Virus record (IMG/VR): IMGVR_UViG_3300029258_003221
Coordinates: 62,001 to 126,000 of that record
Direction: 5' to 3' (one strand)
DNA: 64,000 nucleotides
The notes below the pieces were generated by a model. The model saw only the letters and a list, made by a program, of their open reading frames with translations. It was not told the DNA's origin and searched no databases. The position numbers were made by a program, and so were the translations under genes. This document shows positions 147 through 50,347 of the stretch, one piece after another. Position 1 is the stretch's first letter, and each line of letters begins with the position of its first letter.

Positions 147-1106
147 ATGCAAGGAATTCGTGTAAAGTACATTTTGTATCCGATGTCAATCATAATGAGC
201 ATAGTCATGTTAATTGGCATCAGTATAAGAGTGCAAAGAGCAAACGTTCTGGAAATATCTGTTGATAACTCTAATCCAGAATTGACGATGCCTATCGTTG
301 AAAATGACCCTTATGCACACTTGGCTGCAAATGTAGCTCCTGTTCCCAAAAGAGGAATTGAGTATCGAAAATGGTTGCAGGCTTCTGTTAGAATTCGAGT
401 ATCTTATGCATCAGGTTCAGGCACTATTGTCTATTACGATGATAAAACAGGTTGGGCATACATTCAGACATGTGGCCATCTTTGGGGTGGCATGAAAAGC
501 AACATGTCAGCCGAAGAAGGTAAACGAAGAAAAGAAAAATGTCGTATCAATGTTTTTTATCACAACGAAAAGAAACTTGATCAACCAAAAACATACAGTG
601 CAGATGTGTTGTATTACAATAACAGAGGTGGTCCCGGTGGTGGACACGATTGTGCGTTAATTCGATTTAAGCCCGATTGGAAACCAAATTATTTTCCTAT
701 TGCACCTTCAGATTATCGATATAAACCGGGCTCAATGTTACATTCAACTGGATGCGATGGCGCAACAGAAGCTGCACATTATGATGTGCGTGTCATTGGG
801 TTTTCTAATTCTTCTCAGTTTCCAAGTTTGGTCACTACAGAAAACAGTCCAAGACCCGGACGTTCGGGTGGAGGATTGATGAATGACAGTTATTTTGTGG
901 CTATTTGCTGGGGCACTTCAGATCGTTCTGGTAATGGTAACGGGTTCTTTACACCATTGAGTACAGTACGATATTACAACGAAAAAAATGGATTTGGTTG
1001 GCTTAATGATGTTGGAAGTAGTTTGGCAAGACAAATCCCAATTAAAGACAGAAACAACCCTCAAAGAAGGTATGAACCAGATTACATTCCATTGCCGGGA
1101 CGTTAA
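147..1106 (+). CDS. membrane-anchored trypsin-like serine protease
   Basis: GSGT..TCGH, HDCALI and GRSGGG give the His/Asp/Ser triad; N-terminal hydrophobic helix; GGAG before ATG147. Confidence 0.85.
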   Translation: MQGIRVKYILYPMSIIMSIVMLIGISIRVQRANVLEISVDNSNPELTMPIVENDPYAHLAANVAPVPKRGIEYRKWLQASVRIRVSYASGSGTIVYYDDKTGWAYIQTCGHLWGGMKSNMSAEEGKRRKEKCRINVFYHNEKKLDQPKTYSADVLYYNNRGGPGGGHDCALIRFKPDWKPNYFPIAPSDYRYKPGSMLHSTGCDGATEAAHYDVRVIGFSNSSQFPSLVTTENSPRPGRSGGGLMNDSYFVAICWGTSDRSGNGNGFFTPLSTVRYYNEKNGFGWLNDVGSSLARQIPIKDRNNPQRRYEPDYIPLPGR

Positions 1107-1468
1107 ACGTTGTCTCTCCAAGCTTTACCGAGTTCGCCGATGTGATCAGAATGTACAACAGTATCAAAATCCTGTTGTGCTAGTTGGAGCAATTGTCTCG
1201 CATATCCTTGTCGCCTAACATCTGGCATTGTGTAAACATTGGCAATTTGGGCATTAGTTCCATCTCTTGATACAACCTGAAGGGCACTAACAGCCTGCCC
1301 ATCAACCATGTAAATGTATCGATAAGAACCATGCGGTGAGACATACTTCACCGCACCATTCTTAGTGTCACCGCCCAAATTTTCTTCTGGGCCAATCTGA
1401 CTGGTTTGACCTGCTGGACTCAGAAGGTATTGCAGCATTTCATTTTCTAACCAAAGTTTAAACTTCAT
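1103..1468 (-). CDS. GNAT acetyltransferase with capsid-targeting-like N-terminus
   Basis: IANVYTMPDVRRQGYARQLL = acetyl-CoA-binding motif A; starts MKFKLWLENE. Confidence 0.85.
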   Translation of the reverse strand: MKFKLWLENEMLQYLLSPAGQTSQIGPEENLGGDTKNGAVKYVSPHGSYRYIYMVDGQAVSALQVVSRDGTNAQIANVYTMPDVRRQGYARQLLQLAQQDFDTVVHSDHIGELGKAWRDNV

Positions 1469-1480
1469 GCCTTATGTATG

Positions 1481-2287
1481 TCACAAGTTACTCATATCTC
1501 CATCCCATCCAGATTGCTGCGTGGAAAGAGGTTTGTAAAAAGGGCATTTGACACGAAAATCACATCTTTTACAGTGATGACCAACATTTCCCCAAACTTT
1601 ATCCGGGTCAGATTGTTCAATTCTTTTGAATGTCTTCAAAAGCTCTTGTTCAACTTTTATTAATGTTGATTCTGTGAAAGTCGCCGCTACTAAACTTCCA
1701 CCATCCACGTAATACAAACCTGCTTTAATGTTTTCAGGTTCAATTTCAAACTCTCGTTGTACCGCTCTTGCATAAACACACAATTGAAGATCCTGTGTGA
1801 TGGTTTTTCTTGTTTTTCTCCATCGACCTTTCTTGGTTGTTTTGTAATCTATGATCCAAGCTTTGTTGCCTTTAATGATCAAGCGGTCGATAAATCCTTT
1901 GACAAAACGTCCGTGAGGAGGATCAAGATCGTAGTAAATCTCATGTTCAACAATCCCATCTGTCCCCATGCTATCCATCAGTTTTTGAATGGATCTCAAA
2001 TCTTTGTTGAGTCGTCTTTGATATTCTGCTGGAAGCTTTTCAGGGGCTGTAACGCCTTTTTCCAGTTCAATTTTTCCTTTCAAAACATCAGTGGTTACAT
2101 CACCCAAAGGGATTTCTGCTTTGTGCTCAACAAAATGTTCAGCTATTTTGTGTATGATTTTTCCATACGTGAAGTAGAAAGGCTCTTCATCGTCTCTTTC
2201 TACTTTGAGATGATATTGATATTTGTACTTCTGTTGGCATTGATCGTAAGTATTTTTTCGGCTGACCGATATGTGATTGATATCCAT
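1481..2287 (-). CDS. PD-(D/E)XK exonuclease, Cas4/RecB-like (Fe-S)
   Basis: GFIDRL, IIDYKT and QLCVY motifs; N-terminal Cys plus C-terminal CxxCxxxxxC. Confidence 0.88.
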   Translation of the reverse strand: MDINHISVSRKNTYDQCQQKYKYQYHLKVERDDEEPFYFTYGKIIHKIAEHFVEHKAEIPLGDVTTDVLKGKIELEKGVTAPEKLPAEYQRRLNKDLRSIQKLMDSMGTDGIVEHEIYYDLDPPHGRFVKGFIDRLIIKGNKAWIIDYKTTKKGRWRKTRKTITQDLQLCVYARAVQREFEIEPENIKAGLYYVDGGSLVAATFTESTLIKVEQELLKTFKRIEQSDPDKVWGNVGHHCKRCDFRVKCPFYKPLSTQQSGWDGDMSNL

Positions 2288-2317
2288 AGAGTTTCCTAAT
2301 CTTTTTACGAGATGCTA

Positions 2318-2346
2318 TTGCAACATCTCTACGTCATCGATATTAT
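2318..2346 (+). promoter_or_regulatory. sigma70-type promoter for primase
   Basis: TTGCAA-17 nt-TATTAT. Confidence 0.5.
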
Positions 2347-2381
2347 CGTCAATCTTAGAAAAATACACAAGAGGAATTGTA

Positions 2382-3437
2382 ATGGCGGTCGATTATGACT
2401 CGTTTTTAAATTGGGCGACTGATCGCTTTGGGGAATCAAACATCAAATTCCGCAAAGGGGGACGAGAAATTTGCACCCACAGTTTCTTTGTAGACGGTCA
2501 TCCTGATTTTCCTGATGGTGATCACAAATTTAAACTCTGGATGAATCCAGACGGTGGGAAAAACGAGCTTGAAGGAGGAGCTTACCGTTGTTGGTATACA
2601 GATCATATGGGATCATTGATTTCCCTTGTCAGCATTGTTGATAAAGTTCCATATGATGTTGCGGCAGATATTATCTGTGACGAAATTCCCCTTCGAGCTT
2701 TGGAAAAAAAAGTTCATGATTTTTACAGCGTCAAACAAGATGATCCTCAAGAAACCATAGAAGAAATTAAACAAGAGCTGGAATTCCCACCAGACACATA
2801 TAAAATCGAAGAAGTTCGAGGTCATTGGATGGGAGCACGTGCGTTAGAATATCTTGCCAGTCGAAAAATTCCATCTCAGGGATTTTATGTTTGTATTGAC
2901 GGTGATTACAGAAATCGCCTTGTCATTCCATATTACAACAAAGCAGGTGAATTGTTTTATTACAATTGCCGAACATTAGATAAGAACCCAAAAACCTTGA
3001 GGTATATGAAGCCACCTCCTGAAGATGCAGATCAGGAAAATGTTCTTTATTTCCCTGAATGGCCTGCGGCAGGAAGCAAAATTTATATCACAGAAGGTGA
3101 ATTTGATGCTTTCACTTTATGGTTGTCTGGCTTTTATGGCGTTGCCTGTGGCGGAAAATTTCTTTCATCATCACAAATTGAAATGATTCGTGATTACAAA
3201 GTAGTTTTAGCATTTGATAGCGATGATGCAGGTGAACAGGCTTTGTTGAATATTGGTGAAACTTTGTTGGCTGATGGCTTTCAGGACATGCAGTATGTTA
3301 GACCACCTAAAGTTTTCAAAGACTGGAATAAGCTTTTAGAGCAAAGAAATATCGATACCCTAAAAGCTTATATCCAGCGTTTTGAAAAACCGTACAATAG
3401 TTGGACGGTCAATTCGTTGACTGCCAAAAGGCTTTAG
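2382..3437 (+). CDS. DNA primase (TOPRIM; DnaG/T4 gp61-like)
   Basis: YRNRLVIP, YITEGEFDA, FDSDDAG and KDWN motifs; GAGGA RBS before ATG2382. Confidence 0.9.
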   Translation: MAVDYDSFLNWATDRFGESNIKFRKGGREICTHSFFVDGHPDFPDGDHKFKLWMNPDGGKNELEGGAYRCWYTDHMGSLISLVSIVDKVPYDVAADIICDEIPLRALEKKVHDFYSVKQDDPQETIEEIKQELEFPPDTYKIEEVRGHWMGARALEYLASRKIPSQGFYVCIDGDYRNRLVIPYYNKAGELFYYNCRTLDKNPKTLRYMKPPPEDADQENVLYFPEWPAAGSKIYITEGEFDAFTLWLSGFYGVACGGKFLSSSQIEMIRDYKVVLAFDSDDAGEQALLNIGETLLADGFQDMQYVRPPKVFKDWNKLLEQRNIDTLKAYIQRFEKPYNSWTVNSLTAKRL

Positions 3438-3547
3438 CAAGTGCAGTTGTCGCACGAGCATCCATCACAGTGACAATCGACACAGCTACAAACTGTACAG
3501 TCGCCCGAAGTACAGCCTTCGCATTTACAAGTACATTCGTTATTCAT
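3434..3547 (-). CDS. metallothionein-like 37-aa peptide MNNECTCKCEGCTSGDCTVCSCVDCHCDGCSCDNCTC
   Basis: 13 Cys in 37 aa in CxC/CxxC pattern, no Phe/Tyr/Trp; AAGGAG RBS (3554-3559) and ACTAAATA (3566-3573) upstream; below the ORF-track cutoff. Confidence 0.85.
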   Translation of the reverse strand: MNNECTCKCEGCTSGDCTVCSCVDCHCDGCSCDNCTC

Positions 3548-3590
3548 GGGAATCTCCTTTAATCATATTTAGTCTTTACTCTGGTATATT

Positions 3591-4085
3591 ATGCATTCAA
3601 AAACAATAGAACAACTTCAATATTTTGTGGGAAAAGTTTGTACTGTTCTCACCTCACCTGTAAACCGTGAATTTGATGAGCTAAGAGCACGGGAGCATTT
3701 TGTGCTTCGTGTTGGGGCAATTAACCTTGATGGAATCTGGGGAACTCATCCCGGAAGTGGGATGACCAGCTTTTTTCAATGGTCGCCCAGTTTAATTGGG
3801 ATATGTGAAGAAATTGAGCTTGATCCAAATAATCCAGAACATGCTCAAATGATTGAACAATATGAGAAACAAACTGGACAGAAGATCAAAAGCGACATTT
3901 CTTCCCCGGTACCAACTAAGAAAAAAGAAAAAGATTTGGTGCAGCTAAAAGAGCCACCAAAAAAACAAACGGCACCTGATGAACAAGTGCCGTTTGTTGA
4001 CATTTCAAATTTAGAAAAGCTCGCTGCTCAAACTAAAATGCAATATGATCAATATGATTCAGTCAGAGATAAGCTTTCCCCTTAA
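3591..4085 (+). CDS. hypothetical protein
   Basis: 164-aa ORF filling the gap between neighbouring genes. Confidence 0.65.
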   Translation: MHSKTIEQLQYFVGKVCTVLTSPVNREFDELRAREHFVLRVGAINLDGIWGTHPGSGMTSFFQWSPSLIGICEEIELDPNNPEHAQMIEQYEKQTGQKIKSDISSPVPTKKKEKDLVQLKEPPKKQTAPDEQVPFVDISNLEKLAAQTKMQYDQYDSVRDKLSP

Positions 4086-6131: not shown

Positions 6132-6171
6132 GTGTTTCCATTCCCCTTTGGGTTTCTATTTATGTCTTTCA

Positions 6172-6654: not shown

Positions 6655-6675
6655 TCTTTCCCCTCTTTCTTCTAT

Positions 6676-8802
6676 TCATTCTATTGGCTGACAGTTTTCA
6701 GCAGCAATCAAACAACCTTTTGCCACTGAATAAACTGGATCTTTAGGTCTGATGACACTGCCGATTTCAATTGGAAGATCAGCGTTTTTGAGAACATCTC
6801 TAAACATATCATCAAAACCCGGAGGACTTGATGTGCCACCAGCAACAACAATGTCAACTGGATGATCAAGTCTGGCTTTTTTCTCATGTTCAATTAAACC
6901 CTGTTTGATTCCAGCAACAGTCTTTTGAATCATGAGTTCGTATTGTGTTTTAATTGCTCTTTCGACAAGAGAAACAGGCTCTTTCGATAAATCAATTTTT
7001 GTTTTTTCTTTGTTAATGAAGGCAATTGTTTCACCAGTTGCCTTAGCAGATTGTTTATCAATCCAGTCGCCACTGTTGACAATGGCAAAGGTAAAGACTT
7101 CTGCACCATAAAGTCCGAACGCAACATTAACCATTCCTGCTCCGCAGTTGTGAATAGTCAGTTGTGGACCAGAGAAAGAATGATCTCCCGGAACTTGTAA
7201 ATCGTAAACTTTACCCTCGTATTCTTCGTGTTCAATTGCTTGAACTCTACCGCAGCAAAATCCGTCTTCAAGGAAAATTGATTCTTTGAAACAACCGTTG
7301 TCGCAATTTGTTTCATTCATATTTTGGACAAGTGAAGAACAAATTTTCTTACCAGCAACACTGACCGTCCACTCCATCTTTTTTCCAAAAATGATCCTAT
7401 TTTCTTGTTTAAGAATATGTTCTCTAGGTTCTCTCCAACCGACACTAGATGCAAAACCAATTCTGGAAAATAATTGTTTAGCCAGAAGTATGAGCTTTGT
7501 GTTTGTGTTTCCGAATACGATTTGATCTTCGGAGATCGTTCCATCCGCTCGAACCATTCCACACAGAAGGTTGAAGCATTCTGAGTTTGTCAATCTGTCG
7601 ATTGTCCATGGGTAATGCTTTTCTCCGCTGTCATCGTAACAGTGGTTTTTCATCCAGTTAACCAAGCCTTGACTGTAACACTTCAATCTTGTGACAGACT
7701 CTCCCTTGCTTGTTTCTGTGGAGTTTTTACCAAATCGTTTCGATAAGATTTCTTTGGCATCCTGCACGTAATCTGTTTCGTGTGCTCCAAAGTCAATTTG
7801 AATACAACCTTCTTTTTCACTGATACTTCCATCTCCCATAAAGTATCCCATGAATCTTTGTAGATTTGGCGTAGATTCAATTCTTTTCTTGTTCCATTTC
7901 TTAGAACAAGTTGTTCTTTCGCAGAGATTGATTGAAGGTCTTGTGGCGTTTCTATTTTGCCCAATAATTGGTTCACCAACTATATCTCCAATTTCTATTT
8001 CTTCACAACCAACCCAATTCCATTTCCCGTTTCTTTTGACATACAATTCATGATTATCCACAAATTTGTACTCTTCTGTGTTGTTTGAATAACCTGCGAT
8101 TTGAATTTTTGTCATAATTCCATCAAAAGGCTTGACTATGACTTTGTTAATTTCACTCCATCGACCTTTGTGTGTAATAACCTTATCGCCTTCCTTGACT
8201 TTTTCAATTTCAACAATGCCTTTATCAGTGTATATTTTAGTGCCCGGACATAAACATGAAATGCCGATGCCCGTAAACATCTTTTCTGATAATTCAGAAT
8301 AAACCAGAGCCATTCCTTCATTCAAAGGACGTGCATCTAGTGTCAGCCCTTCTGGTGATTTGTAGGCTTTGAATACAGCTTCAAGAACCTTTGAGTGATA
8401 ATCTGCATCTGTTTCAGCATTGATGGCATTTGCCGGAACGCTGTAGTAGACAAGTTCTTTATCGTTTGTGACATTATCTAACAAACTGTGCATCATGATG
8501 CTCATGATTTGAAAAGCATCGCTTTCGGCTGGGTTAACACAACCGTCTTTCATTGGGCGACTTAGTTCAAGCTGAGTCATTGTGTAAGCCATGTTTATGG
8601 CAGCTTCACCCAATGCATAAGCAGTATTTGCATCTTCTCGTTGAATCAGCGGCACGCCAGCCTTTTTCATCATATTAAAGACAAATGGATTGTCTAATGA
8701 AAACTTCAAAAAGGCATTGACTTCTTTTTTGAAGACAAGATCTTTTTCGTCATTCCTTTTGCAGCTAATCAAATTGTATGTTCCACAATCAAACCCTATC
8801 AA
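6676..8802 (-). CDS. actin-fold ATPase (volactin-like) interrupted by an intein
   Basis: Phosphate-1 GFDCGTYN, connect NEGMALVYSEL, phosphate-2 GIS|CGAG, adenosine VAGGTS, connect-2 YSVAKG; spliced length 338 aa. Confidence 0.88.
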   Translation of the reverse strand: MIGFDCGTYNLISCKRNDEKDLVFKKEVNAFLKFSLDNPFVFNMMKKAGVPLIQREDANTAYALGEAAINMAYTMTQLELSRPMKDGCVNPAESDAFQIMSIMMHSLLDNVTNDKELVYYSVPANAINAETDADYHSKVLEAVFKAYKSPEGLTLDARPLNEGMALVYSELSEKMFTGIGISCLCPGTKIYTDKGIVEIEKVKEGDKVITHKGRWSEINKVIVKPFDGIMTKIQIAGYSNNTEEYKFVDNHELYVKRNGKWNWVGCEEIEIGDIVGEPIIGQNRNATRPSINLCERTTCSKKWNKKRIESTPNLQRFMGYFMGDGSISEKEGCIQIDFGAHETDYVQDAKEILSKRFGKNSTETSKGESVTRLKCYSQGLVNWMKNHCYDDSGEKHYPWTIDRLTNSECFNLLCGMVRADGTISEDQIVFGNTNTKLILLAKQLFSRIGFASSVGWREPREHILKQENRIIFGKKMEWTVSVAGKKICSSLVQNMNETNCDNGCFKESIFLEDGFCCGRVQAIEHEEYEGKVYDLQVPGDHSFSGPQLTIHNCGAGMVNVAFGLYGAEVFTFAIVNSGDWIDKQSAKATGETIAFINKEKTKIDLSKEPVSLVERAIKTQYELMIQKTVAGIKQGLIEHEKKARLDHPVDIVVAGGTSSPPGFDDMFRDVLKNADLPIEIGSVIRPKDPVYSVAKGCLIAAENCQPIE
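7147..8256 (-). mobile_element. 370-aa intein with LAGLIDADG homing endonuclease
   Basis: N-terminus CLCPGT, block B VDNHEL, YFMGDGS and GMVRADGT motifs, VYDLQV...IHN followed by +1 Cys. Confidence 0.95.
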
Positions 8803-9044: not shown

Positions 9045-9051
9045 AGTGTAG

Positions 9052-10047: not shown

Positions 10048-10067
10048 GCCCTAATAAGAGTGTGTCA

Positions 10068-10109
10068 ATAAAAAAAGCCGCACAAGTTTAACCTTGTACG
10101 GCTTTGTTT
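10068..10109 (-). terminator. intrinsic terminator
   Basis: AAAGCCGCACAAG/CTTGTACGGCTTT stem with a T-tract on the minus strand. Confidence 0.7.
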
Positions 10110-10123
10110 CATTTGAGTTTCTG

Positions 10124-18754: not shown

Positions 18755-20569
18755 TTATTTATTGCACGGAACGATCATCACACATTGGTTTCCATTGTCA
18801 TCTTTTGAAACCATTTCATCCATGCTTATCTTTAAGTCAATTGGACTGCCTCGATAGACCATTTCAACTGTTGGCATTTCTTCAGGGAAGATTAATGGAA
18901 TGCCAATGTCTTCTGGAATAACCAAATCAATTCCTTCAGGGAATCCCTGAACCTCAACTGTTGTAAACACATCAACTTTAATTGGATCTGGTTGTTCAAT
19001 TGGTATCTTTCCTTCAAATTCCAATTTGATTGACTGAGGGGTTTGTATTTCAACTTCAACAGGAATTGATTGCCCTTTATATACGAGTTCGATTTCATCA
19101 GGAATATCCTGTCCCACTAAATCAATTTGAGTCGGTATAGGAGATTCTGGCCCATGAATTTTGATGTCAGTTGGAATATTGGCTTCTGATGTATCAAGTT
19201 TGATGTCTTTGATCATATTCTCCAGACCTTTTGAGTCTATTTCGACTTTTGGCATTTTGTCTGGAGCTACGATTTGAATTTCTTCTGGCAAACCTACCGT
19301 TTCATATTCAATTTTGGATGTTTGTTGAGCTTCAAAAATGTCTGCAAACTCTTCACCAAATTCGCTTGCCTCAAAGTCATTGCTGGAAAACATACGAGGA
19401 GTTTCTACTGGTCGTACCATTGTCATTTGAACTTCCATCTGAGGAATTGACGCTGGATCAATTTGCAGCATAGGAAATTCAATATCATCGACATTCAAAG
19501 AAATTTGCGATTCCGGTGGAATAATCACAATCGTTGGTGGGATCGGTGGATCAATCACAATTGTTGGTGGAATTGGTGGATCAACTACAATAATAGAAGG
19601 AATTCCAGTAACAATAATCTGACTTGGGATATCTCCGGGAATGTCAGTGGTGATTTGATCTGGAATATTGATGTCTCCGATAGAGATGTTTACCCCTTCT
19701 GTTACATCAGCACAAGGCAATACAATTGGTGGAATTTGAATTTCTGGCTCAGGCACATCACATGGAACAAAAGTGAAATCTGGAACAAGGACAGGGTCTG
19801 GAAATGGAACTTCAAATTCATCATCAATAGGAGGTGGCGGTTCTGCTGGATTGTCTCTTTCAATTGGTGTTTGAATGATCTGACACTTGTCATTTGAGAC
19901 TGTTACCACTGGATCAATAGTGGCATTGATGGCATAAGTGTGCGTTCCAGATAATTCTGTTGTTGTAAATTCTCCATCGCCAAAATCGAGTCTAAAAGAC
20001 GTTGAAAGAGTTGTTGCACTGATTTCAACAATGTATGTCGCTAAAACACCTGCTTCATTGTCAATTTCAGTTGTGTTGAATGTGAAGTTGACATCTGGAC
20101 AGGAAAAGTCATCAAATATGATTGCCAGTTCTTCAAGGTTTCTAATCCGCCAATCAAGTGTTCTTTGTCGTTCATCAAAATTGATTCCTGTAAAATCCTC
20201 CATTTTCAGGATGGAGTCTACCAACTGATTGTGATGTTCAGCTACAACATAACTTCTAACCCAAGTTCCTTTCCTGTTCCATTTAGATGGACTGCCGCCT
20301 AATTCTCTGGCACAATCTTTGAGCTTATAGACCTTTCCATCAGAGTTCTTTTCAACTGAATCGTAATAAAACAATTCTCCATTGATGTTGCCAAAGCCAT
20401 TATCGGCCCAAATTTCAGGCTTGTCTGATTTGACAGGTATAATTTCAATTTCCTGAGACCATGCCGGATTTTCTACGCATATCTTTGTCTCTGTAGTGTT
20501 GTAGACAAGATACAAAGTTGAATCATCGTCAATTGCTTTTGGATATAATGGTACAGGAGGAAAAGCCAT
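18755..20569 (-). CDS. virion tail/baseplate-associated protein (HHN domain, PKD-like, PxIP repeats)
   Basis: VVAEHHNQL, LDFGDG, DPPIPPTIV repeats; paralogous to the two adjacent genes. Confidence 0.65.
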   Translation of the reverse strand: MAFPPVPLYPKAIDDDSTLYLVYNTTETKICVENPAWSQEIEIIPVKSDKPEIWADNGFGNINGELFYYDSVEKNSDGKVYKLKDCARELGGSPSKWNRKGTWVRSYVVAEHHNQLVDSILKMEDFTGINFDERQRTLDWRIRNLEELAIIFDDFSCPDVNFTFNTTEIDNEAGVLATYIVEISATTLSTSFRLDFGDGEFTTTELSGTHTYAINATIDPVVTVSNDKCQIIQTPIERDNPAEPPPPIDDEFEVPFPDPVLVPDFTFVPCDVPEPEIQIPPIVLPCADVTEGVNISIGDINIPDQITTDIPGDIPSQIIVTGIPSIIVVDPPIPPTIVIDPPIPPTIVIIPPESQISLNVDDIEFPMLQIDPASIPQMEVQMTMVRPVETPRMFSSNDFEASEFGEEFADIFEAQQTSKIEYETVGLPEEIQIVAPDKMPKVEIDSKGLENMIKDIKLDTSEANIPTDIKIHGPESPIPTQIDLVGQDIPDEIELVYKGQSIPVEVEIQTPQSIKLEFEGKIPIEQPDPIKVDVFTTVEVQGFPEGIDLVIPEDIGIPLIFPEEMPTVEMVYRGSPIDLKISMDEMVSKDDNGNQCVMIVPCNK

Positions 20570-42839: not shown

Positions 42840-42854
42840 GCCTTTCCTTATTTT

Positions 42855-43361
42855 TTATGATTTGCTATGAACAAGTGAGCTGTAATCAGTCCCTGTTGTT
42901 CTCACCAGAACATTACCAGCGTGCTCAGGATCACCTTCAACAGTTGCTTTTCTTTCGTCTCGTTCAGCATCAATACTTTTCTCAAAGAATTTTTTGACTT
43001 CCTTGCCAACCATTTCTATGACTCTTTCACCAGCTTTTTTCTGATCTACATTTTCATCGCTGAGAAGGTCATGAAACATTTCTTCGACATTTAAAGGATA
43101 TGCTGTGCCATAAGGGTGGGTTTGGCTTTCTTTCTGAATACGAAAGGCGAGACGATCTCCAACTCTATATATGCGGATGCCGTCAAAACTCGCTCCTCCC
43201 ATTGGGTTAAGACAAAAAATGTAAGGATCATCTTTTTCATCTGTTTCAAGATGACTCTCTACTTTCATTCCATTGCGTTCAAAAAGTTTCTTCAACAAAC
43301 CTAGTTGTTTCAAAGTATCTCTTTGTTTCTTGTCTATGAAATCTCCAAATGTTTTACGCAT
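42855..43361 (-). CDS. hypothetical protein
   Basis: GAGG RBS; starts MRKTFGDFID. Confidence 0.7.
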   Translation of the reverse strand: MRKTFGDFIDKKQRDTLKQLGLLKKLFERNGMKVESHLETDEKDDPYIFCLNPMGGASFDGIRIYRVGDRLAFRIQKESQTHPYGTAYPLNVEEMFHDLLSDENVDQKKAGERVIEMVGKEVKKFFEKSIDAERDERKATVEGDPEHAGNVLVRTTGTDYSSLVHSKS

Positions 43362-43368
43362 TATTACC

Positions 43369-45181: not shown

Positions 45182-45225
45182 GATGGTATATATGAGTGAA
45201 AGCCCGGAATAATAAGGAATAGAGC

Positions 45226-45615: not shown

Positions 45616-45682
45616 GCTTTTTGTTTCTTAATTATTCAAGACTATTGCTATAGATATAGGCAAGCTAATAGTGGAGATGCAA

Positions 45683-47137
45683 ATGAAAAAGTTTCATGAA
45701 TACATTGAACTCAAAGAAGCAACTGAGGAAAAGAAGTCATCTGGACCTGATCCTTTGAATGCAAAAATAACACTTGGTGATGGCAATGACTATGAGCCAT
45801 TTACAGTAAGTGATGATCCAAATAGTGAAAACTACGGAAAAAACAGAGGTCTTGCCCCAATTATTCGTGCTTTCAAAAAGGGCGGAAACTGGGGTTGGAG
45901 CAAGGATGACAAAACTGGAGAAGACAAACCAGTTAAAATCAGCGGTAAGAAGCTTTACCTGACAGGCGGTGCTGTTCGTGACCACCTTGCAGGCAAGACT
46001 CCCAGAAACATAGAACTCGCCACTAACGCATCTCCTGACGAGGTCTATCATATTCTGAAACAAAACAACTTCACGTTCTCAGATGGTGAAACTAAAGGCA
46101 AGAAAACAAACCAGTTCTCTGTAAAGTCAAAAGATCCAAATGGAAGACCATTTGCATTTGAAATTAATGTTGGTGATGACACATATGAACTGGAAATCTT
46201 CACCAAAACTCCAAAAGGAAGCGAAGAGCCAGAACCCGGCACACAATCGGATGATGCCGCAGGTCGTGATTTCACCATGAATGCTATGTCGATTCTTCTG
46301 TCAACTGACAATGGTGACAACAAAGAACTTCATGATTTCTATGGTGGTATGCACCATTTAGCCAATGGTAAAGTTCAAACGATTGGTGATATGGAAACCA
46401 GTTTTTCTGATGATCCAAAGCGAATGCTGAGATTCGGTAGAATGGTTTCTGGATATGGCGATCCAGCGAAAATTACTGATGATGAAAAAGCAACTGTTCA
46501 AAAACTTGCTTCTTTGATTTCAAAACTTGATCCAAATGATGTTATGGATGATTTTGATAAAGGCATGAAAAAAGATGATTGTGATCCTCGTAAACACCTT
46601 CAGATTTTTGGTGACCTTGGACTTTTAGGTGCAATTTTCCCGGATATGTCCGTAGATGAATCTTTCCCCAAAGAACTCACAGAACTTGGTGACAGAAACA
46701 TGGCTCTTGCTTGGATGTTGCGACACAACCACCCAGCAAGACTTAATGAAATTGGACTCGGTCCAGATGATGAAAAGATTGCTTTCTTGGTTCGCTCTTT
46801 GAATCTTGGGTTGGGACTTGATGAACATATGCTCGATCAGGCAACCACAAGCTTCACTCGATCAGGTGTGTCAGCCAGAAAATTAAAGAAATGGCTGACT
46901 GTTATGGGCAAAGTTGATGAAGGAACAGTCGATGCATTTTTGAAGCATGCTACTTCACCACGAGTCAAAGTTTATGTAATGAAGGATGATGGCTCAGAGG
47001 GTGTTCGAGAAGAGTTTGAAGATCTGTTTGATCCATTCACGGGACAACCGACTAACCATCAAATGCTTGAAAACCGCAAACGTGAAATGGAGTACAAGAA
47101 CTATCTGAAACACGTTGAGTTCTGTAAACCTGCTTAG
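45683..47137 (+). CDS. class II tRNA nucleotidyltransferase (CCA/polyA) homolog with altered catalytic residues
   Basis: YLTGGAVRD, RDFTMNA, DFYGG, DDPKRMLR; the DxD motif reads NIE. Confidence 0.85.
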   Translation: MKKFHEYIELKEATEEKKSSGPDPLNAKITLGDGNDYEPFTVSDDPNSENYGKNRGLAPIIRAFKKGGNWGWSKDDKTGEDKPVKISGKKLYLTGGAVRDHLAGKTPRNIELATNASPDEVYHILKQNNFTFSDGETKGKKTNQFSVKSKDPNGRPFAFEINVGDDTYELEIFTKTPKGSEEPEPGTQSDDAAGRDFTMNAMSILLSTDNGDNKELHDFYGGMHHLANGKVQTIGDMETSFSDDPKRMLRFGRMVSGYGDPAKITDDEKATVQKLASLISKLDPNDVMDDFDKGMKKDDCDPRKHLQIFGDLGLLGAIFPDMSVDESFPKELTELGDRNMALAWMLRHNHPARLNEIGLGPDDEKIAFLVRSLNLGLGLDEHMLDQATTSFTRSGVSARKLKKWLTVMGKVDEGTVDAFLKHATSPRVKVYVMKDDGSEGVREEFEDLFDPFTGQPTNHQMLENRKREMEYKNYLKHVEFCKPA

Positions 47138-47145
47138 GAGAATTG

Positions 47146-47445
47146 ATGAAAACATTTGAACAATGGTTTGAATCAAAACAACGACAATATGAAAGCAAGC
47201 CTTTTCAAAACTTGCGACATTTTTATGGCTTCATGGAAAAATTCTTTCCTGATCTTGATGCAAAAAGCATTGATTTTCATAGGAATCTGCCTGATTTAGA
47301 ACACATGCACGGAGTGTTGAATGGTCCCTTTGGTAGAAAGTGGATCAATTCTGCTCGAAATAAACTGTTTGGAATGGGAGCACGACAGAAAGTAACAGGT
47401 GCCAATGTAGGAAACATAGAATTAGGGCCGAAAGTAATACGATAA
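47146..47445 (+). CDS. small protein with capsid-targeting-like N-terminus
   Basis: Starts MKTFEQWFES; AGGAG RBS. Confidence 0.7.
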   Translation: MKTFEQWFESKQRQYESKPFQNLRHFYGFMEKFFPDLDAKSIDFHRNLPDLEHMHGVLNGPFGRKWINSARNKLFGMGARQKVTGANVGNIELGPKVIR

Positions 47446-47457
47446 AAATCTCAGTCT

Positions 47458-47940
47458 ATGAATTTTAAGAAATGGATAGAATCTGTTTGGTATCACGGCA
47501 CGCAGAGTGGAAATGAAATTCGCCAGTCTGGTCAAATTGATATTTCAACTTCTGGTGGCGGGCAACGTGGTTTAAAAGGCGTTTGGCTCACAAGAGATCC
47601 ATCTTACGCTAATCTTTACGCCAAAGCATCAAGAGAAAATCCCAGACAACCTGAAATTTTACAAGTTGAAGTTCCCGACAACCTCAACATTGCCGATTTT
47701 TATGCTATTCAAAATTCTCTTGGCATAAATGATGCAGAAAGAGCTATGTGGAAATTTGTCGGGTTTGATGTTGATGATTTTGCATCCATGCAACCTGTGC
47801 GTGATATGCAGCCATTTGCTATGACTAAATTACTTCAACAACAAGGGTATGATGGGGCTTTAATTCCAAATACCATACAAAAAGGCGGGGAACCTGAATT
47901 GGTTATTTTTAACCCCGGAAATGTTCGATTGATTGCATAA
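47458..47940 (+). CDS. ADP-ribosyltransferase-like protein (ART-PolyVal type)
   Basis: WYHGT, GVWLT..YA..YA, GYDG, ELVIFNP; starts MNFKKWIES. Confidence 0.7.
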   Translation: MNFKKWIESVWYHGTQSGNEIRQSGQIDISTSGGGQRGLKGVWLTRDPSYANLYAKASRENPRQPEILQVEVPDNLNIADFYAIQNSLGINDAERAMWKFVGFDVDDFASMQPVRDMQPFAMTKLLQQQGYDGALIPNTIQKGGEPELVIFNPGNVRLIA

Positions 47941-47972
47941 AAAAAACCTCGATAAGAAAACTTATCGAGGTT
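47939..47972 (-). terminator. intrinsic terminator between convergent genes
   Basis: Perfect 12-bp stem AACCTCGATAAG/CTTATCGAGGTT with adjacent A/T tract. Confidence 0.8.
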
Positions 47973-47992
47973 ACGATTCTTGCCACAAAAGC

Positions 47993-48418
47993 TTAGCGGA
48001 CAGGTGCTGGAGCTTCGTTGATGTTTGCTTCGGCTGGTTCACTTGCCGGTGCTGGTGCCACTTTCACTGCATTAACAGATTCACTGACTGGTCCAGCAAC
48101 AGATTCTCTGACTGGAGCAGGGGCAGATTCTCTAACTACAGTGTTAGATTTCACAGTTTCTGTTGATCCCGCTGGTGGAAAACAAATTCCATTCTTGCAG
48201 TTCGGTCGAACAACAGGTTTTGACTGGATGACACGTGAGCTTATCACACGTGGCTGGTGATAAATGATTCTGGATGGCTGACACCTGTAATAGGTGCGAC
48301 AGCTATTGTATGTGTAGCAACTGTTAGATCGATAACAGGAGCTAGGACAATTTCCAGCTTCAGCGAACGAAGGCAGCGCAAACAACATCGCTGCCGCCAT
48401 GGTAATTCCAAATTTCAT
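47993..48418 (-). CDS. secreted Cys/Pro/Ala-rich small protein
   Basis: GGAGG RBS, signal peptide ending AEA, CKNGIC motif. Confidence 0.7.
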   Translation of the reverse strand: MKFGITMAAAMLFALPSFAEAGNCPSSCYRSNSCYTYNSCRTYYRCQPSRIIYHQPRVISSRVIQSKPVVRPNCKNGICFPPAGSTETVKSNTVVRESAPAPVRESVAGPVSESVNAVKVAPAPASEPAEANINEAPAPVR

Positions 48419-48616
48419 GTTTTCCTCCGTGGGAGTTTTTGACAAAGAGCCTTTTGCTCTCAACTGTAGTTAGTGGTTCTTAAACAAGAAACCACACGTC
48501 AGTTCAATTTAGTTTGTCCTTTGAGGCACGACAACCCTTCAGCATTGAAATTTTTGATTTATCTGGTAACTTACTCTAAAGAAGATGTGTCTTTAAAAGA
48601 CAATCAGGAGAACACA

Positions 48617-49258
48617 ATGCAAAAATTGCAAATTTTCGATTTTGACGGCACCCTTGTCTTCACGCCTACCGATAACGCAAAAACTCGGAAATTGTTTGAA
48701 GATGAAACTGGCATTCCATGGGTAATTGACAAAAAACTTGCCAGAAAGCTTACAAATCGACTGGGAAGACCCATCACAATGCGTAAGGGATGGTTTGGGC
48801 GCAAAGAAACCCTTGAACCACCACTTGTTCCCAATCCAACACCAGATGAAATGATCAATCGAAGTGTTTGTGATCTTTTTCTACAGTCAAAACAAGACGA
48901 AAATGCTCTAACTGTCATGATGACTGGTCGTCATGAAGGTTTGCGATCTCACGTTCTTCGTATTTTGAATGATGTTGGATTGGTTGACGTAAAATATGAA
49001 GATGGCAAAGCAATTCAAACTGATTCCGATGTCGTTTGCTATTTAAATGGCAATAATGGTCCAGCTCCAGAGATCGTTGGACAAAAGCCGCATGAAACAC
49101 ATCCATGGAAAATCTGGATTCTCGAACAGCTCATTCATGTTGGAAATTATGATTTGATTGAGATTTGGGAAGATCGTAAGAAGTATATCAAACCATTTGA
49201 AGAATTTGGTGAAAGTATTGAAGAGGACTTTGTCGTTCACTTTGTGGAGGGAAATTGA
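48617..49258 (+). CDS. HAD phosphatase, Swiss-Army-Knife RNA-repair type (HAD_SAK_1-like)
   Basis: FDFDGTL, MTGR, K, IWEDR; AGGAG RBS. Confidence 0.8.
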   Translation: MQKLQIFDFDGTLVFTPTDNAKTRKLFEDETGIPWVIDKKLARKLTNRLGRPITMRKGWFGRKETLEPPLVPNPTPDEMINRSVCDLFLQSKQDENALTVMMTGRHEGLRSHVLRILNDVGLVDVKYEDGKAIQTDSDVVCYLNGNNGPAPEIVGQKPHETHPWKIWILEQLIHVGNYDLIEIWEDRKKYIKPFEEFGESIEEDFVVHFVEGN

Positions 49259-49566
49259 GAAACGATTGGTTAAAACGAAGTTGGAAATTACATTGTTGGA
49301 CAGATAGACTTGTTTTACACATTTGCAAAGGTCCATATAGATATTCAGTGCCTGTTGATTCATTGCGGCATCTTAGAAATCAATTTGGCCTTAGTCCTAT
49401 AATTGAACTTGCATATACTGCAAAAACACAACTTATTGGAGGTTCATTTGGGCTTCCTTCAAGGGCAAGTGTTTCAAAAGAAGAATTTCAAAAGATCATT
49501 AAAGTCATTCATTCATTTAATGAAACGGTTGATGGGAAAATTATTCCCTGTCCACAATGGCCTTAA
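49255..49566 (+). CDS. hypothetical protein
   Basis: Coupled start (TTGA overlap) after GGAGG. Confidence 0.55.
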   Translation: MRNDWLKRSWKLHCWTDRLVLHICKGPYRYSVPVDSLRHLRNQFGLSPIIELAYTAKTQLIGGSFGLPSRASVSKEEFQKIIKVIHSFNETVDGKIIPCPQWP

Positions 49567-50084
49567 TCATCCCATGGCATTTTCGAACGCCGGATTTGAT
49601 CTGGCGTTATATCACTTTGCCAACGCTGAAACATATTTTGAATTGCATCTTTTGGTACGCCATGTTTATTGCGTTGTGCTAAAACTTCAGCAGCCGAATC
49701 TAAGGCCGATTGATCCTTTCTGCTCATTGCATCTTTGATGTTGTTCCAAATATCACTTTGTGGTTCTTGGATTCTAATATCATAGTCAAATTTGTCAGCA
49801 AGTAAAACATAGGGTTTTGCTTCCCAAGCTTCGATATTTGTATTGTCTACAATAATTGGAGAAACGCTTTTCTTCATAGCTTCTGCGACACGATTCACAT
49901 TCCATTGATGAGCTTCAGGTAATTTTTCTGGATCAAAGTTATATTCTTTTCCAAAAAAATCATCAGTGGAAAAAGATTGCCCACCTAAAGTTTGAGAGAT
50001 CGTTGACTTTCCTGTGCCACTCGGGCCACGAATGATGTAAACGATCTTCTCAACATCTTCTAACCATGTACGGAATGAGTTCAT
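49563..50084 (-). CDS. N4BP2/CNPase-like P-loop polynucleotide kinase (AAA_33)
   Basis: IRGPSGTGKST, STDDFF, IVDNTN..WE..PY, RNKHGVP; starts MNSFRTWLED. Confidence 0.88.
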   Translation of the reverse strand: MNSFRTWLEDVEKIVYIIRGPSGTGKSTISQTLGGQSFSTDDFFGKEYNFDPEKLPEAHQWNVNRVAEAMKKSVSPIIVDNTNIEAWEAKPYVLLADKFDYDIRIQEPQSDIWNNIKDAMSRKDQSALDSAAEVLAQRNKHGVPKDAIQNMFQRWQSDITPDQIRRSKMPWDD

Positions 50085-50347
50085 TTGCCCACAGGTGCTA
50101 CAGGTTTACAGTTTTTCTTCGATGCTGTGACTTTGAATGGCCAGACAGTTCCCATATGACCGCAAGGATCTTTGTAGTCATCGCTCATATCCTTACGGAC
50201 ATCACGAGCACCCGCAAATTTCTCTTTGTGATTGATCTTTTTCTTTTTGTCACCACAGTCACTTTCATTTACCTTCCAAGCCACTGTGCCATCTTCTGAA
50301 ATGTCAATCAAATCCTTCTCTTCACACCAGTTTACGAAATCTCGCAT
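50081..50347 (-). CDS. small protein with capsid-targeting-like N-terminus
   Basis: Starts MRDFVNWCEE; AGGAGG RBS; TCTATATA upstream. Confidence 0.65.
   Translation of the reverse strand: MRDFVNWCEEKDLIDISEDGTVAWKVNESDCGDKKKKINHKEKFAGARDVRKDMSDDYKDPCGHMGTVWPFKVTASKKNCKPVAPVGK

What the first reader, a model, noticed from the sequence alone, without database searches (positions are those of the whole stretch)
1103..50347. Unrelated enzymes share a T4 capsid-targeting-like N-terminal tag: a candidate injected enzyme payload
Seen: six unrelated ORFs start M-x(1-2)-F-x-x-[WY]-[LIFC]-E. They are GNAT (MKFKLWLENE, 1468), the CCA-like NTase (MKKFHEYIE, 45683), MKTFEQWFES (47146), the ART-like protein (MNFKKWIES, 47458), the polynucleotide kinase (MNSFRTWLED, 50084) and MRDFVNWCEE (50347). 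Looser variants occur at 43361, 44664 and 6131. All six lie in units preceded by the TATAAATA-like octamer, while genes behind sigma70-type promoters lack the tag. Known: T4 internal proteins carry the capsid-targeting sequence MKTYQEFIAE, cleaved after E by the gp21 protease, and T4 packages the ADP-ribosyltransferase Alt. Inference: this phage uses a portable tag to load acetyltransferase, ART, kinase and NTase-fold cargo into the head so they act at injection, for counter-defence or host takeover.
Basis: partly seen in the sequence, partly recalled or inferred. Interest (0 to 1): 0.88.

Follow-up and report, generated by a model that had tools for sequence, protein, structure and literature searches.

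The report
Capsid-targeting-like tag on phage enzymes
An uncultivated 235-kb T4-like phage puts the same short N-terminal peptide, which resembles the T4 signal that loads proteins into the phage head, on unrelated enzymes, so its probable injected enzyme cargo can be read from sequence, although packaging itself has not been shown.

Summary
The core motif F-x-x-[WY]-[LIFC]-E occurs six times in about 19,900 residues of the window. All six sit at residue 3 or 4 of a protein (shuffle expectation 0.005).

Evidence for a T4-type capsid-targeting sequence:
- **Carriers.** They are a GNAT, a CCA-type nucleotidyltransferase, an ART-fold protein, a P-loop kinase and two small unknowns.
- **Add-on.** In the three families tested (kinase, ART, GNAT), close orthologs keep the tag. 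Distant kinase and GNAT homologs start directly at the fold; distant ART homologs carry a different N-terminus.
- **T4-type head genes.** The source genome (234,631 bp) encodes a Portal_T4 portal, a gp21-family (S77) prohead protease, a scaffold-like protein and a gp23 capsid protein. Tagged small proteins lie among them.
- **Relative.** In a 595-kb relative (capsid protein 75.6% identical), 43 of 1,093 N-termini carry the tag. Of these, 65% have a T4-late-promoter-like TA[N]ATA motif 2-9 nt before the ATG (p=4e-25), as structural genes do.
- **T4 cross-check.** A matrix trained on that relative ranks T4's three internal proteins in the top 1% of T4 start positions.

Packaging, cleavage and injection are inferred, not shown. 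I classify this as a new variant of a known kind.

The parts
1103..1468 (-). GNAT acetyltransferase, 121 aa; tag MKFKLWLE is encoded at 1445-1468
   Evidence: Pfam Acetyltransf_1. Tag matrix score 13.3 bits. Close orthologs keep the tag and distant ones start at the core L-x-Y-L-x-P-G.
1469..1480 (-). Late-promoter-like motif CATACATAAGGC directly before the GNAT ATG (TACATA ends 4 nt upstream; no Shine-Dalgarno)
   Evidence: The arrangement matches CATATATAAGGT-ATG and similar sites before tagged genes in LR756511.
42855..43361 (-). 168-aa protein inside the structural operon; tag with one extra residue (MRKTFGDFID, 43332-43361)
   Evidence: Matrix score 8.4 bits. Ortholog of the LR756511 164-aa protein, which has the canonical tag MLEFKEFIDKK (43% identity, E 2e-47). 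No Pfam, PHROG or PDB match.
45182..45194 (-). Late-promoter-like motif CATATATACCATC directly before the 175-aa gene that heads the minus-strand structural operon (45181 down to about 16563)
45648..45660 (+). Late-promoter-like motif CTATAGATATAGG; TAGATA ends 26 nt before the NTase ATG. It heads the NTase-orf99-ART unit.
45683..47137 (+). CCA-type nucleotidyltransferase, 484 aa; tag MKKFHEYIE at 45683-45709, followed by an extension of about 80 aa before the PolyA_pol head domain
   Evidence: Pfam PolyA_pol E 3e-17 from aa 91. PHROG tRNA nucleotidyltransferase. Matrix score 9.9 bits. Orthologs: L011 MKKFQEYLNL, LR756511 MRTTFLEFMGL.
47146..47445 (+). orf99, unknown function; tag MKTFEQWFE at 47146-47172
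   Evidence: Matrix score 18.6 bits. No family match.
47458..47940 (+). ART-fold protein, 160 aa; tag MNFKKWIE at 47458-47481, followed after four residues by the invariant H13-G-T
   Evidence: - Pfam ART-PolyVal 29.7 bits against a cut-off of 31.2.
- Family alignment has invariant H13, Y54 and E147, and the tag is kept in close orthologs.
- AlphaFold model has mean pLDDT 83, with residues 1-5 below 50.
- Foldseek hits are RES, MbcT, ParT, the anti-CRISPR entry 6kyf and PARP domains.
49563..50084 (-). P-loop kinase (AAA_33, polynucleotide-kinase-like), 173 aa; tag MNSFRTWLE at 50058-50084
   Evidence: - Pfam and PHROG matches.
- Orthologs down to 44% identity keep the tag, and distant homologs start at beta-1.
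- In the model the tag is a separate short helix (residues 3-9). The first ten residues have mean pLDDT 51 against 90 overall.
50081..50347 (-). orf88, unknown function; tag MRDFVNWCE at 50321-50347
   Evidence: Matrix score 9.4 bits. No family match.
50365..50375 (-). Late-promoter-like motif CTCTATATAAA; TATATA ends 19 nt before the orf88 ATG. It heads the orf88-kinase unit.

Best explanation
The window comes from a 234,631-bp uncultivated T4-like myovirus. The peptide M-x(1-3)-F-x-x-[WYF]-[LIFCV]-[E] is a portable N-terminal address tag. It is the functional counterpart, and probably a diverged homolog, of the T4 internal-protein capsid targeting sequence.

Proposed mechanism, with each step marked as shown or inferred:
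1. Tagged genes are transcribed from late-type TA[N]ATA promoters together with structural genes. The motif association is shown; the timing is inferred.
2. The tag forms a two-turn amphipathic helix in front of an otherwise complete enzyme fold. The models show this at low confidence.
3. The helix docks the protein onto the scaffolding core while the gp23-type shell assembles on the gp20-type portal (inferred by analogy with T4).
4. The gp21-family S77 protease degrades the scaffold and may trim the tag at a hydrophobic-x-E site (inferred; the site is uncertain).
5. The enzymes remain in the DNA-filled head and enter the next host cell with the DNA. There they act before any phage gene is expressed, for counter-defence or host takeover (inferred).

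The proposed cargo in this phage is the GNAT, the ART-fold protein, the kinase, the CCA-type NTase and the small unknown proteins.
For: **Real, N-terminus-specific signal acting at the protein level**
- There are 6 hits against 0.005 expected, and none is internal.
- An independently trained matrix finds 10 of 208 N-termini against 1 of 822 internal Met positions in the source phage (p=9e-7). In LR756511 it finds 43 of 1,093 against 7 of 3,211 (p=2e-19).
- Synonymous codons and the Met-to-F spacing vary.

**Add-on to unrelated folds**
- The carriers fall in four different Pfam families.
- The tag is kept in close orthologs of all three families tested.
- Distant kinase and GNAT homologs lack it and start at the fold. 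Distant ART homologs carry a different N-terminus (M-N-W-...).
- The models place it outside the fold.

**T4-type head machinery in the same genome**
- Portal_T4, Peptidase_S77, a 302-aa acidic coiled-coil protein at the scaffold position, and Gp23 are present.
- The protease matches phrog_207 at 3e-47 and is about 33% identical to T4 gp21.
- The capsid protein is 28% identical to T4 gp23, E 8e-38.

**Tagged proteins inside head and structural operons**
- An 85-aa protein (MQSFQEYCEN) lies downstream of the portal gene and upstream of the protease gene. A 117-aa protein (MRTFAAYAQE) lies next to the protease gene.
- The 85-aa family keeps M1, F4, Y7 and E9 invariant.
- The 168-aa protein lies in the neck/tail operon.
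- In LR756511 a tagged NADAR, a 486-aa protein with a Pribosyltran domain and tag-like N-terminus MDFKEWYF, and a tagged 1,076-aa protein lie just downstream of the capsid gene on the same strand.

**Late-type promoter link**
- TA[N]ATA ends 2-9 nt before the ATG in 28 of 43 tagged genes against 45 of 1,050 others (p=4e-25).
- The untagged genes with this arrangement include tape-measure-like, gp2-like and baseplate genes.
- All tagged units in the window are headed by such a motif.

**Resemblance to the authentic T4 signal**
- The T4 record shows aromatic 4, aromatic 7 and aliphatic 8 in IPI-III.
- The matrix trained on LR756511 ranks IPI, IPIII and IPII 7th, 12th and 15th of 1,580 T4 Met positions.

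**Literature**
- ART and GNAT domains occur in injected polyvalent proteins (PMC7824862).
Against: - There are no virion data of any kind, and no cultured relative is closer than 30% in the capsid protein.
- The T4 cleavage consensus [LI]-x-E is not enriched after the tag: 18 of 43 tagged proteins against 31% of all genes within the first 30 residues.
- T4's IPs rank high but score only 1-5 bits, below the threshold I used to call tags. The best T4 hit is gp61.1, which is not known to be packaged.
- BLAST finds no gp22, gp67, gp68, gp55 or gp33 homolog. The scaffold is inferred from position and composition, and the late sigma factor is unverified.
- T4's ip genes have no TATAAATA within 90 nt, so late-only expression is not a defining trait.
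- The kinase, the NTase and the neighbouring untagged HAD phosphatase look like an RNA-repair set that could equally be needed in the cytoplasm.
- In the relative, 4% of the proteome would be cargo, which is a large load.
Confidence: 0.6

Rival explanations
1. The tag is a docking peptide for some other hub that acts late in infection. Candidates are a chaperone, the cell membrane, or a phage-built compartment or cytoskeleton (the phage encodes an actin-like protein). It would concentrate enzymes there without packaging them.
For: - The tag is a short amphipathic helix with F, W and L on one face, which is a generic binding or membrane motif.
- The kinase, the NTase and the neighbouring HAD phosphatase resemble a cytoplasmic RNA-repair set. 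In cultured Vibrio phages the homologous kinase sits in a phosphoesterase-RNA ligase-kinase cassette.
- No cleavage consensus follows the tag.
- A second tag type (M-x-W-Y-K) occurs on contig L022, whose head type is unknown.
Against: - It does not explain why the pattern matches the proven T4 capsid signal.
- It does not explain why tagged genes sit in head operons next to the portal, protease and capsid genes.
- It does not explain why a counter-defence-type enzyme such as NADAR would be co-oriented with the capsid gene behind a late-type motif.
Confidence: 0.2
2. The tag is an N-terminal degron or processing signal that times the destruction or activation of these enzymes by a protease. Candidates are host Clp or Lon, the phage Trypsin_2 protease at 147-1106, or the S77 protease acting outside the head.
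For: - A Trypsin_2 protease gene is convergent with the GNAT gene.
- A relative encodes a ClpP-like protease 7 kb from its tagged kinase.
- N-terminal recognition signals of about this length are known for ClpXP (own knowledge).
Against: - Nothing links tag and protease genes across genomes.
- The late-promoter and head-operon associations are not predicted by this idea.
- The match to the T4 capsid signal is unexplained.
Confidence: 0.07
3. The shared N-terminus is a by-product of a nucleotide-level signal. This could be a 5' coding requirement of leaderless late mRNAs, or a promoter-plus-start cassette spread by recombination.
For: 65% of tagged genes in LR756511 have the promoter-like motif 2-9 nt (mostly 4-5 nt) before the ATG, and tagged genes have Shine-Dalgarno-like sequences less often than other genes (14 of 43 against 528 of 1,050), so their mRNAs may be leaderless.
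Against: - Forty-five untagged genes with the same leaderless-type arrangement, including structural genes, have ordinary N-termini.
- Tagged genes with a clear Shine-Dalgarno and no adjacent motif exist, such as orf99, the kinase and orf88.
- The conserved positions swap W, F and Y, which share chemistry rather than codons, and synonymous sites vary.
- The Met-to-F spacing varies from 1 to 3 residues.
Confidence: 0.04
4. The motif is a chance or compositional coincidence, or comes from hidden paralogy of the six proteins.
Against: - Expectation is 0.005 against 6 observed.
- A matrix trained on a different genome recovers all six.
- The tag is conserved in orthologs at 44-80% identity in three families.
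- The carriers have four unrelated Pfam folds.
Confidence: 0.01

Closest known systems
Capsid targeting sequence (CTS) of T4 internal proteins IPI, IPII and IPIII (Mullaney and Black 1996; reviewed in PMC3012670)
   Same: - It is an N-terminal peptide of about 10 residues directly after Met, with aromatic residues at 4 and 7 and an aliphatic residue at 8 (T4 record).
- It is attached to otherwise unrelated proteins.
- The phage has a gp20 portal, a gp21-family protease and a gp23 capsid protein.
- T4 IPs fall in the top 1% of T4 start positions under the tag matrix.
   Different: - W is preferred at position 7, E sits at 9 rather than 10, and the Met-to-F spacing is 1-3 residues.
- There is no consistent [LI]-x-E site.
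- The cargo are recognisable enzymes (GNAT, ART fold, kinase, NTase; NADAR, C39 peptidase and 2H phosphoesterase in the relative) rather than small basic or acidic proteins.
- The repertoire is about 10 proteins in 57% of this genome and 43 in a 595-kb relative, against three in T4.
- There is no sequence homology to the IPs themselves.
- Packaging has not been demonstrated.
T4 Alt, a packaged ADP-ribosyltransferase
   Same: It is an ART-type enzyme made late (TATAAATA lies upstream of alt). The T4 record annotates it as carried in the head and entering the host with the DNA.
   Different: - Alt is 682 aa and does not begin with the IP-type tag.
- The window's ART-fold protein is 160 aa.
- It has no tblastn match (E <= 1e-3) in the GenBank phage collection, which includes T4.
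- Its fold resembles RES, ParT and PARP-type ART domains.
Polyvalent proteins of phages and conjugative elements (Iyer et al. 2017; cited in PMC7824862)
   Same: ART and GNAT domains are delivered into the host together with the DNA. The window's ART matches the ART-PolyVal model.
   Different: In polyvalent proteins many effector domains are fused into one giant protein. Here each domain is a separate small protein with its own address tag.
N-terminal packaging signal of phage P1 DarB (PMC9024508)
   Same: An N-terminal peptide is sufficient to direct a heterologous protein into the capsid, and the cargo is an anti-restriction enzyme.
   Different: The P1 signal is 30 residues on a single 250-kDa protein and depends on other Dar proteins. 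The phage lineage is different, and no shared short motif across many proteins has been described.
Encapsulin cargo-loading peptides
   Same: A short portable peptide targets unrelated enzymes to the interior of an HK97-fold shell (own knowledge).
   Different: Those peptides are usually C-terminal, the shell is a cellular nanocompartment rather than a virion, and there is no sequence resemblance. This is an analogy only.

Membership tests
T4-type capsid targeting sequence (CTS-tagged head cargo) | Short peptide at the extreme N-terminus, directly after the initiator Met | tested here: met
   All six core motifs start at residue 3-4 and none is internal. There are 0 hits in 898 internal Met controls.
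T4-type capsid targeting sequence (CTS-tagged head cargo) | Sequence pattern of the T4 IP signal: aromatic at 4, aromatic at 7, aliphatic at 8, acidic at 9-10 | tested here: met
   N-termini from the T4 record compared with the window's tags. The matrix trained on LR756511 ranks IPI, IPIII and IPII 7th, 12th and 15th of 1,580 T4 positions, although at only 1-5 bits.
T4-type capsid targeting sequence (CTS-tagged head cargo) | Portable: attached to unrelated proteins and absent from their homologs elsewhere | tested here: met
   Four unrelated Pfam families carry it. It is absent from distant kinase and GNAT homologs, and distant ART homologs carry a different N-terminus.
T4-type capsid targeting sequence (CTS-tagged head cargo) | Same genome encodes the T4-type prohead: gp20 portal, gp21 (S77) protease, scaffolding core, gp23 shell | tested here: met
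   Portal_T4, Peptidase_S77 and Gp23 are present. The scaffold is inferred only from position and acidic coiled-coil composition. There is no BLAST hit to gp22, gp67 or gp68.
T4-type capsid targeting sequence (CTS-tagged head cargo) | Removal by the prohead protease at a [LI]-x-E site after the tag | tested here: inconclusive
   [LI]-x-E is not enriched after the tag. The likely capsid-protein maturation site is [IF]-N-E in the two phages, so an aromatic-x-E site within the tag (W-L-E) is conceivable but untested.
T4-type capsid targeting sequence (CTS-tagged head cargo) | Tag-dependent presence of the protein in the mature virion and delivery into the host | not testable with these tools
   This needs virion proteomics or a reporter packaging assay, and there is no cultured relative.
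T4 internal proteins IPI/IPII/IPIII (as protein families) | Sequence homology of the mature protein to an IP | tested here: not met
   None of the tagged proteins has a PHROG or Pfam match to internal virion proteins. They belong to other folds.
ART-PolyVal / polyvalent proteins | ART-PolyVal domain at or above the Pfam gathering score | tested here: inconclusive
   The score is 29.7 bits against a cut-off of 31.2. The precomputed annotation lists PF18760 for most homologs. The fold search supports the ART superfamily.
ART-PolyVal / polyvalent proteins | Large multidomain 'polyvalent' architecture | tested here: not met
   The protein and all 14 homologs are stand-alone, 155-184 aa.

The most novel reading that the evidence does not exclude
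A deep-branching clade of T4-like huge phages uses a sequence-readable address code to load dozens of separate enzymes into the head. That would be about 4-5% of the proteome: at least 10 proteins in 57% of this genome and 43 in a 595-kb relative. The whole injected effector set of an uncultivated phage could then be listed from its genome alone. The tags would come in lineage-specific dialects (F-x-x-W-L-E here; M-x-W-Y-K on unrelated contigs) that co-evolve with the scaffold. They would be coupled to late promoters placed 4-5 nt from the start codon, giving leaderless-type mRNAs.
Probability: 0.35. Interest if true: 0.85.

Novelty: new variant of a known kind. Interest (0 to 1): 0.68.

Why it matters
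Proteins that travel inside the phage head act before any phage gene is transcribed. They are therefore a first line against restriction, ADP-ribosylating and nuclease-type defences. In T4 this class has only three small members, which were found by biochemistry.

If the tag described here is the same kind of signal, it would have three uses.
- It gives a simple sequence rule for predicting head cargo in huge phages that cannot be grown.
- It points to concrete candidate counter-defence enzymes: a GNAT, an ART-fold protein, a kinase and a CCA-type nucleotidyltransferase here, and a NADAR, a C39 peptidase and a 2H phosphoesterase in a relative.
- It suggests that separately tagged small enzymes are an alternative to the fused 'polyvalent' effector proteins.

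It also offers new portable packaging tags for loading proteins into phage capsids. The link to promoter motifs 4-5 nt from the start codon is a separate lead on late gene expression in these phages.

Tried and rejected
- **Exact T4 late promoter.** A search for exact TATAAATA gave 0 hits in the window, which first suggested the promoter claim was wrong. K-mer enrichment and distance analysis in LR756511 later showed degenerate TA[N]ATA variants.
- **Sigma70 and terminator scan of 45-50.7 kb.** Counts were not above shuffles, so it was uninformative.
- **Similarity to GenBank phages.** Megablast gave nothing, and blastn gave only one weak hit to LR756511. tblastn with the ART protein found nothing.
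- **Identity of the 431-aa and 168-aa proteins.** PDB sequence searches found nothing useful. PHROGs gave nothing for orf88, orf99 or the 85-, 117- and 618-aa proteins. My early guess that the 431-aa and 168-aa proteins are sheath and tube is unsupported and I have dropped it.
- **Late transcription and prohead core proteins.** Local tblastn with T4 gp55, gp33, gp45, gp22, gp67, gp68, gp2, gp3, gp13-15, gp18 and gp19 found no hits. Only gp21 and gp4 were found. The late sigma factor could not be confirmed.
- **RNA genes.** Rfam and ARAGORN found no RNA gene in the window.
- **DNA-level cassette or recombination idea.** Rejected because synonymous sites and spacing vary.
- **Shared 11-mer CTGTAAACCTG before orf99 and the kinase.** There are 3 matches at one mismatch or fewer against 0.84 expected, and 5 of 100 shuffles reach this. 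I do not consider it convincing.
- **Genome walk.** It covered only record positions 10,037-144,365 (57%). The remaining part was not read.

Full report
**Origin of the window.** The window is positions 62,001-126,000, in the same orientation, of a 234,631-bp metagenomic contig. The contig is JGI 3300029258 Ga0309772_1000111, also held as IMGVR_UViG_3300029258_003221. No cultured phage is close. The only similar GenBank record is LR756511.1, an uncultured 595,163-bp phage whose major capsid protein is 75.6% identical. Cultured T4-like phages reach at most about 30%.

**The observation.**
- In a 77-gene set (19,891 aa) the core F..[WY][LIFC]E occurs exactly six times. Every occurrence is at residue 3 or 4 of a protein, and none is internal. 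Shuffling gives 0.005 N-terminal hits per proteome.
- Codons differ at synonymous sites, and one or two residues separate Met from F, so the constraint is on the peptide and not on the DNA.
- Pfam confirms the GNAT, the PolyA_pol-head nucleotidyltransferase (domain from residue 91) and the AAA_33 kinase (P-loop from residue 16). ART-PolyVal scores just under its cut-off.
- For the ART protein, the family alignment has invariant H13, Y54 and E147. An AlphaFold model (mean pLDDT 83) matches RES, MbcT and ParT toxins, the anti-CRISPR entry 6kyf and PARP catalytic domains. It therefore belongs to the ART superfamily.

**The tag is an add-on.**
- Kinase: orthologs down to 44% identity keep M-x-x-F-[RK]-[TK]-[WF]-x-E. 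More distant homologs start directly at strand beta-1. These include homologs in cultured Vibrio phages, where the kinase sits in a phosphoesterase-RNA ligase-kinase cassette, and the homolog in LR756511.
- ART family: these are stand-alone proteins of about 160 aa found only in metagenomes. Close members keep the tag; more distant members carry a different N-terminus (M-N-W-...).
- GNAT family: close orthologs score 10-20 bits on the tag matrix. Distant ones begin at the conserved core L-x-Y-L-x-P-G.
- In the kinase model (mean pLDDT 90) residues 3-9 form a short helix, the first ten residues have mean pLDDT 51, and beta-1 starts at residue 14.

**Head machinery.** Walking left of the window found the head module. 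Part of it was read from a 56-kb ENA contig that carries proteins identical to the source's. In order it contains:
- a Terminase_6 large terminase;
- a Portal_T4 portal that carries an intein;
- a 287-aa protein;
- an 85-aa protein;
- a CTP_transf_3 protein (243 aa);
- a 220-aa protein;
- a 117-aa protein on the opposite strand;
- a 618-aa protein;
- a Peptidase_S77 protease;
- a 302-aa acidic coiled-coil protein at the scaffold position;
- a Gp23 capsid protein.

The protease matches the head-maturation family phrog_207 at 3e-47 and is about 33% identical to T4 gp21. The capsid protein is 28% identical to T4 gp23, E 8e-38. Within this module the 85-aa protein begins MQSFQEYCEN and the 117-aa protein begins MRTFAAYAQE. 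The 85-aa family has only three clusters among 1.84 billion representatives, and M1, F4, Y7 and E9 are invariant in it.

**Census in two genomes.**
- I read all of LR756511 in pieces, called 1,093 genes and trained a position matrix on its N-termini. The consensus is M-[LK]-[TN]-F-[RK]-[EQ]-W-[LFC]-E.
- Allowing F at positions 3-6, 43 of 1,093 N-termini reach 10 bits, against 7 of 3,211 internal Met positions (p=2e-19).
- The same matrix was not trained on the source phage. It finds 10 of 208 N-termini against 1 of 822 internal positions (p=9e-7).
It is the ortholog (43% identity, E 2e-47) of an LR756511 protein with a canonical tag. The other two looser variants, 44664 and 6131, score below zero.
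- A block of about 40 small genes next to the window has no tagged member. These genes have a different upstream motif and a different ribosome-binding site.

**Cargo in the relative.** Most tagged LR756511 proteins have no Pfam family. Those that do include a NADAR domain, a Peptidase_C39-like protease, a 2H phosphoesterase (tRNA_lig_CPD), a SnoaL-like protein and an HTH protein. Downstream of the capsid gene, on the same strand and in close succession, lie the tagged NADAR, a 486-aa protein with a Pribosyltran domain and the tag-like N-terminus MDFKEWYF (not among the 43 matrix-called tags), and a tagged 1,076-aa protein.

**Promoter link.**
- Exact TATAAATA is absent from the window. In LR756511, however, the hexamers TAAATA and TATATA are enriched upstream of tagged genes (p=2e-8 and 5e-6).
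- A TA[N]ATA motif ends 2-9 nt (mostly 4-5 nt) before the ATG in 28 of 43 tagged genes, against 45 of 1,050 others (p=4e-25). Tagged genes have a Shine-Dalgarno-like sequence less often than other genes (14 of 43 against 528 of 1,050).
- The untagged genes with this arrangement include the tape-measure-like 1,640-aa gene, the gp2-like gene and a baseplate gene. This looks like a T4-late-type promoter (TATAAATA in T4, established knowledge) placed so that the mRNA is nearly leaderless.
- In the source phage, 6 of 10 tagged genes have the motif within 40 nt. Every tagged gene in the window lies in a unit headed by one: TATAGATA before NTase-orf99-ART, TATATAAA before orf88-kinase, CATACATAAGGC directly before the GNAT ATG, and CATATATACC before the structural operon that holds the 168-aa protein.
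The timing itself is inferred, and BLAST did not find a gp55-type sigma factor.

**Comparison with T4.**
All have aromatic residues at 4 and 7.
- I scanned all 1,580 Met positions in six frames of T4 that have at least 40 codons before a stop, using the matrix trained on LR756511. IPI ranks 7th, IPIII 12th and IPII 15th.
- Their absolute scores are low (1-5 bits). The top hit is gp61.1 (MKTFKEFIKE), which is not known to be packaged.
- T4 Alt lacks the tag. It has TATAAATA upstream, whereas the ip genes do not within 90 nt.
- The literature describes T-even internal proteins as diverse defence proteins that share only the capsid targeting sequence (PMC3012670). It describes a functionally analogous 30-residue signal in P1 DarB (PMC9024508). 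It also reports ART and GNAT domains in injected polyvalent proteins (PMC7824862). No paper in the library combines the capsid targeting sequence with jumbo or huge phages.

**What is shown and what is inferred.**
- Shown: a selected, portable, N-terminus-specific peptide on unrelated folds; T4-type head genes in the same genome; tagged genes inside head and structural operons; a strong association with a promoter-like motif shared with structural genes; and a pattern match to the authentic T4 signal.
- Inferred: docking to the scaffold, packaging, trimming and injection.
- The cleavage step is the weakest. [LI]-x-E is not enriched after the tag. The probable capsid maturation site is I-N-E in the source phage and F-N-E in LR756511, so a hydrophobic-x-E site such as W-L-E is possible.

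**Rival explanations.**
- A leaderless-translation artefact is rejected. Untagged genes share the promoter arrangement, and tagged genes with a normal Shine-Dalgarno exist.
- A recombining DNA cassette is rejected on codon variation.
- Chance and paralogy are rejected.
- A non-packaging docking peptide or a degron cannot be excluded.

**Verdict.** It is a new variant of a known kind. The principle is that of T4. The sequence variant, the enzyme cargo, the size of the repertoire and the occurrence in uncultivated huge phages are new.

Noticed in passing
L022:6925-13012 (Logan ERR14964778 contig, 17.7 kb) and L024:4483-6663: A second, different shared N-terminus occurs on other contigs. Five genes on L022 begin M-(x)-W-Y-K: a 165-aa protein, a 56-aa kinase fragment, the 155-aa kinase, and 222-aa and 440-aa proteins. 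On L024 an ART homolog begins MNWYKR and a 132-aa protein begins MNWLSK. Distant kinase and ART homologs share this 'dialect'. The head type of these contigs is unknown.
   Followed up: partly
LR756511 genome-wide (L032-L044); in the window 1469-1480(-) and 45182-45194(-): The late-promoter-like TA[N]ATA motif ends only 4-5 nt before the ATG, and tagged genes have Shine-Dalgarno-like sequences less often than others. It occurs before 73 genes of LR756511, structural genes included. This implies leaderless or near-leaderless late mRNAs.
   Followed up: partly
L031:85-16067 (source contig about 128.3-144.3 kb, just right of the window): A block of about 40 small same-strand genes has a repeated upstream motif GACACCCA[CG]TAAC, a CAACAAC-rich leader and an unusual ribosome-binding site GGGGAGAG. 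None of them carries the tag. It is probably an early gene block with its own promoter type.
   Followed up: partly
window 59561-60025: A 465-nt gap with no called gene contains a tRNA-like T-arm (GGTTCGAGTCC, followed by CTCCTCGCCCA). ARAGORN and Rfam report nothing there.
   Followed up: partly
window 6676-8802 (-) and L014:2695-5220 (-): Two genes are interrupted by inteins. One is an actin-like Volactin/MreB-type protein with Hint and LAGLIDADG domains. The other is the Portal_T4 portal, with Intein_splicing.
   Followed up: no
T4 record NC_000866, gene 61.1 (18966-19130, minus strand): The best T4 match to the tag matrix is the 54-aa hypothetical protein gp61.1, which begins MKTFKEFIKE. 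It is closer to the IP signal than any other T4 start, and it could be an unrecognised tagged protein.
   Followed up: no
window 47122-47132 (+) and 50101-50111 (-): The identical 11-mer CTGTAAACCTG lies about 15-20 nt before the ATG of orf99 and of the kinase, inside the 3' ends of the preceding genes. The significance is marginal: 3 matches at one mismatch or fewer against 0.84 expected.
   Followed up: partly
L037:46543-46992 (LR756511 about 242.5-243.0 kb): LR756511 has a second, weaker gp21-like protease paralog (27% identity to T4 gp21, E 3e-6) far from the head module.
   Followed up: no
window 48617-49258 (+), 53510-54229 (+), 147-1106 (+): Untagged enzymes sit among or next to the tagged units. 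They are a HAD_SAK_1 phosphatase between the ART and kinase genes, a His_Phos_1 phosphatase, and a Trypsin_2 serine protease convergent with the GNAT gene.
   Followed up: no
window 55015-55389 (+) and 62185-62823 (+): Two proteins begin with twin-arginine-like signal peptides (MKRREALKIIGA..., MKRRDALKTLGF...), which suggests exported phage proteins.
   Followed up: no
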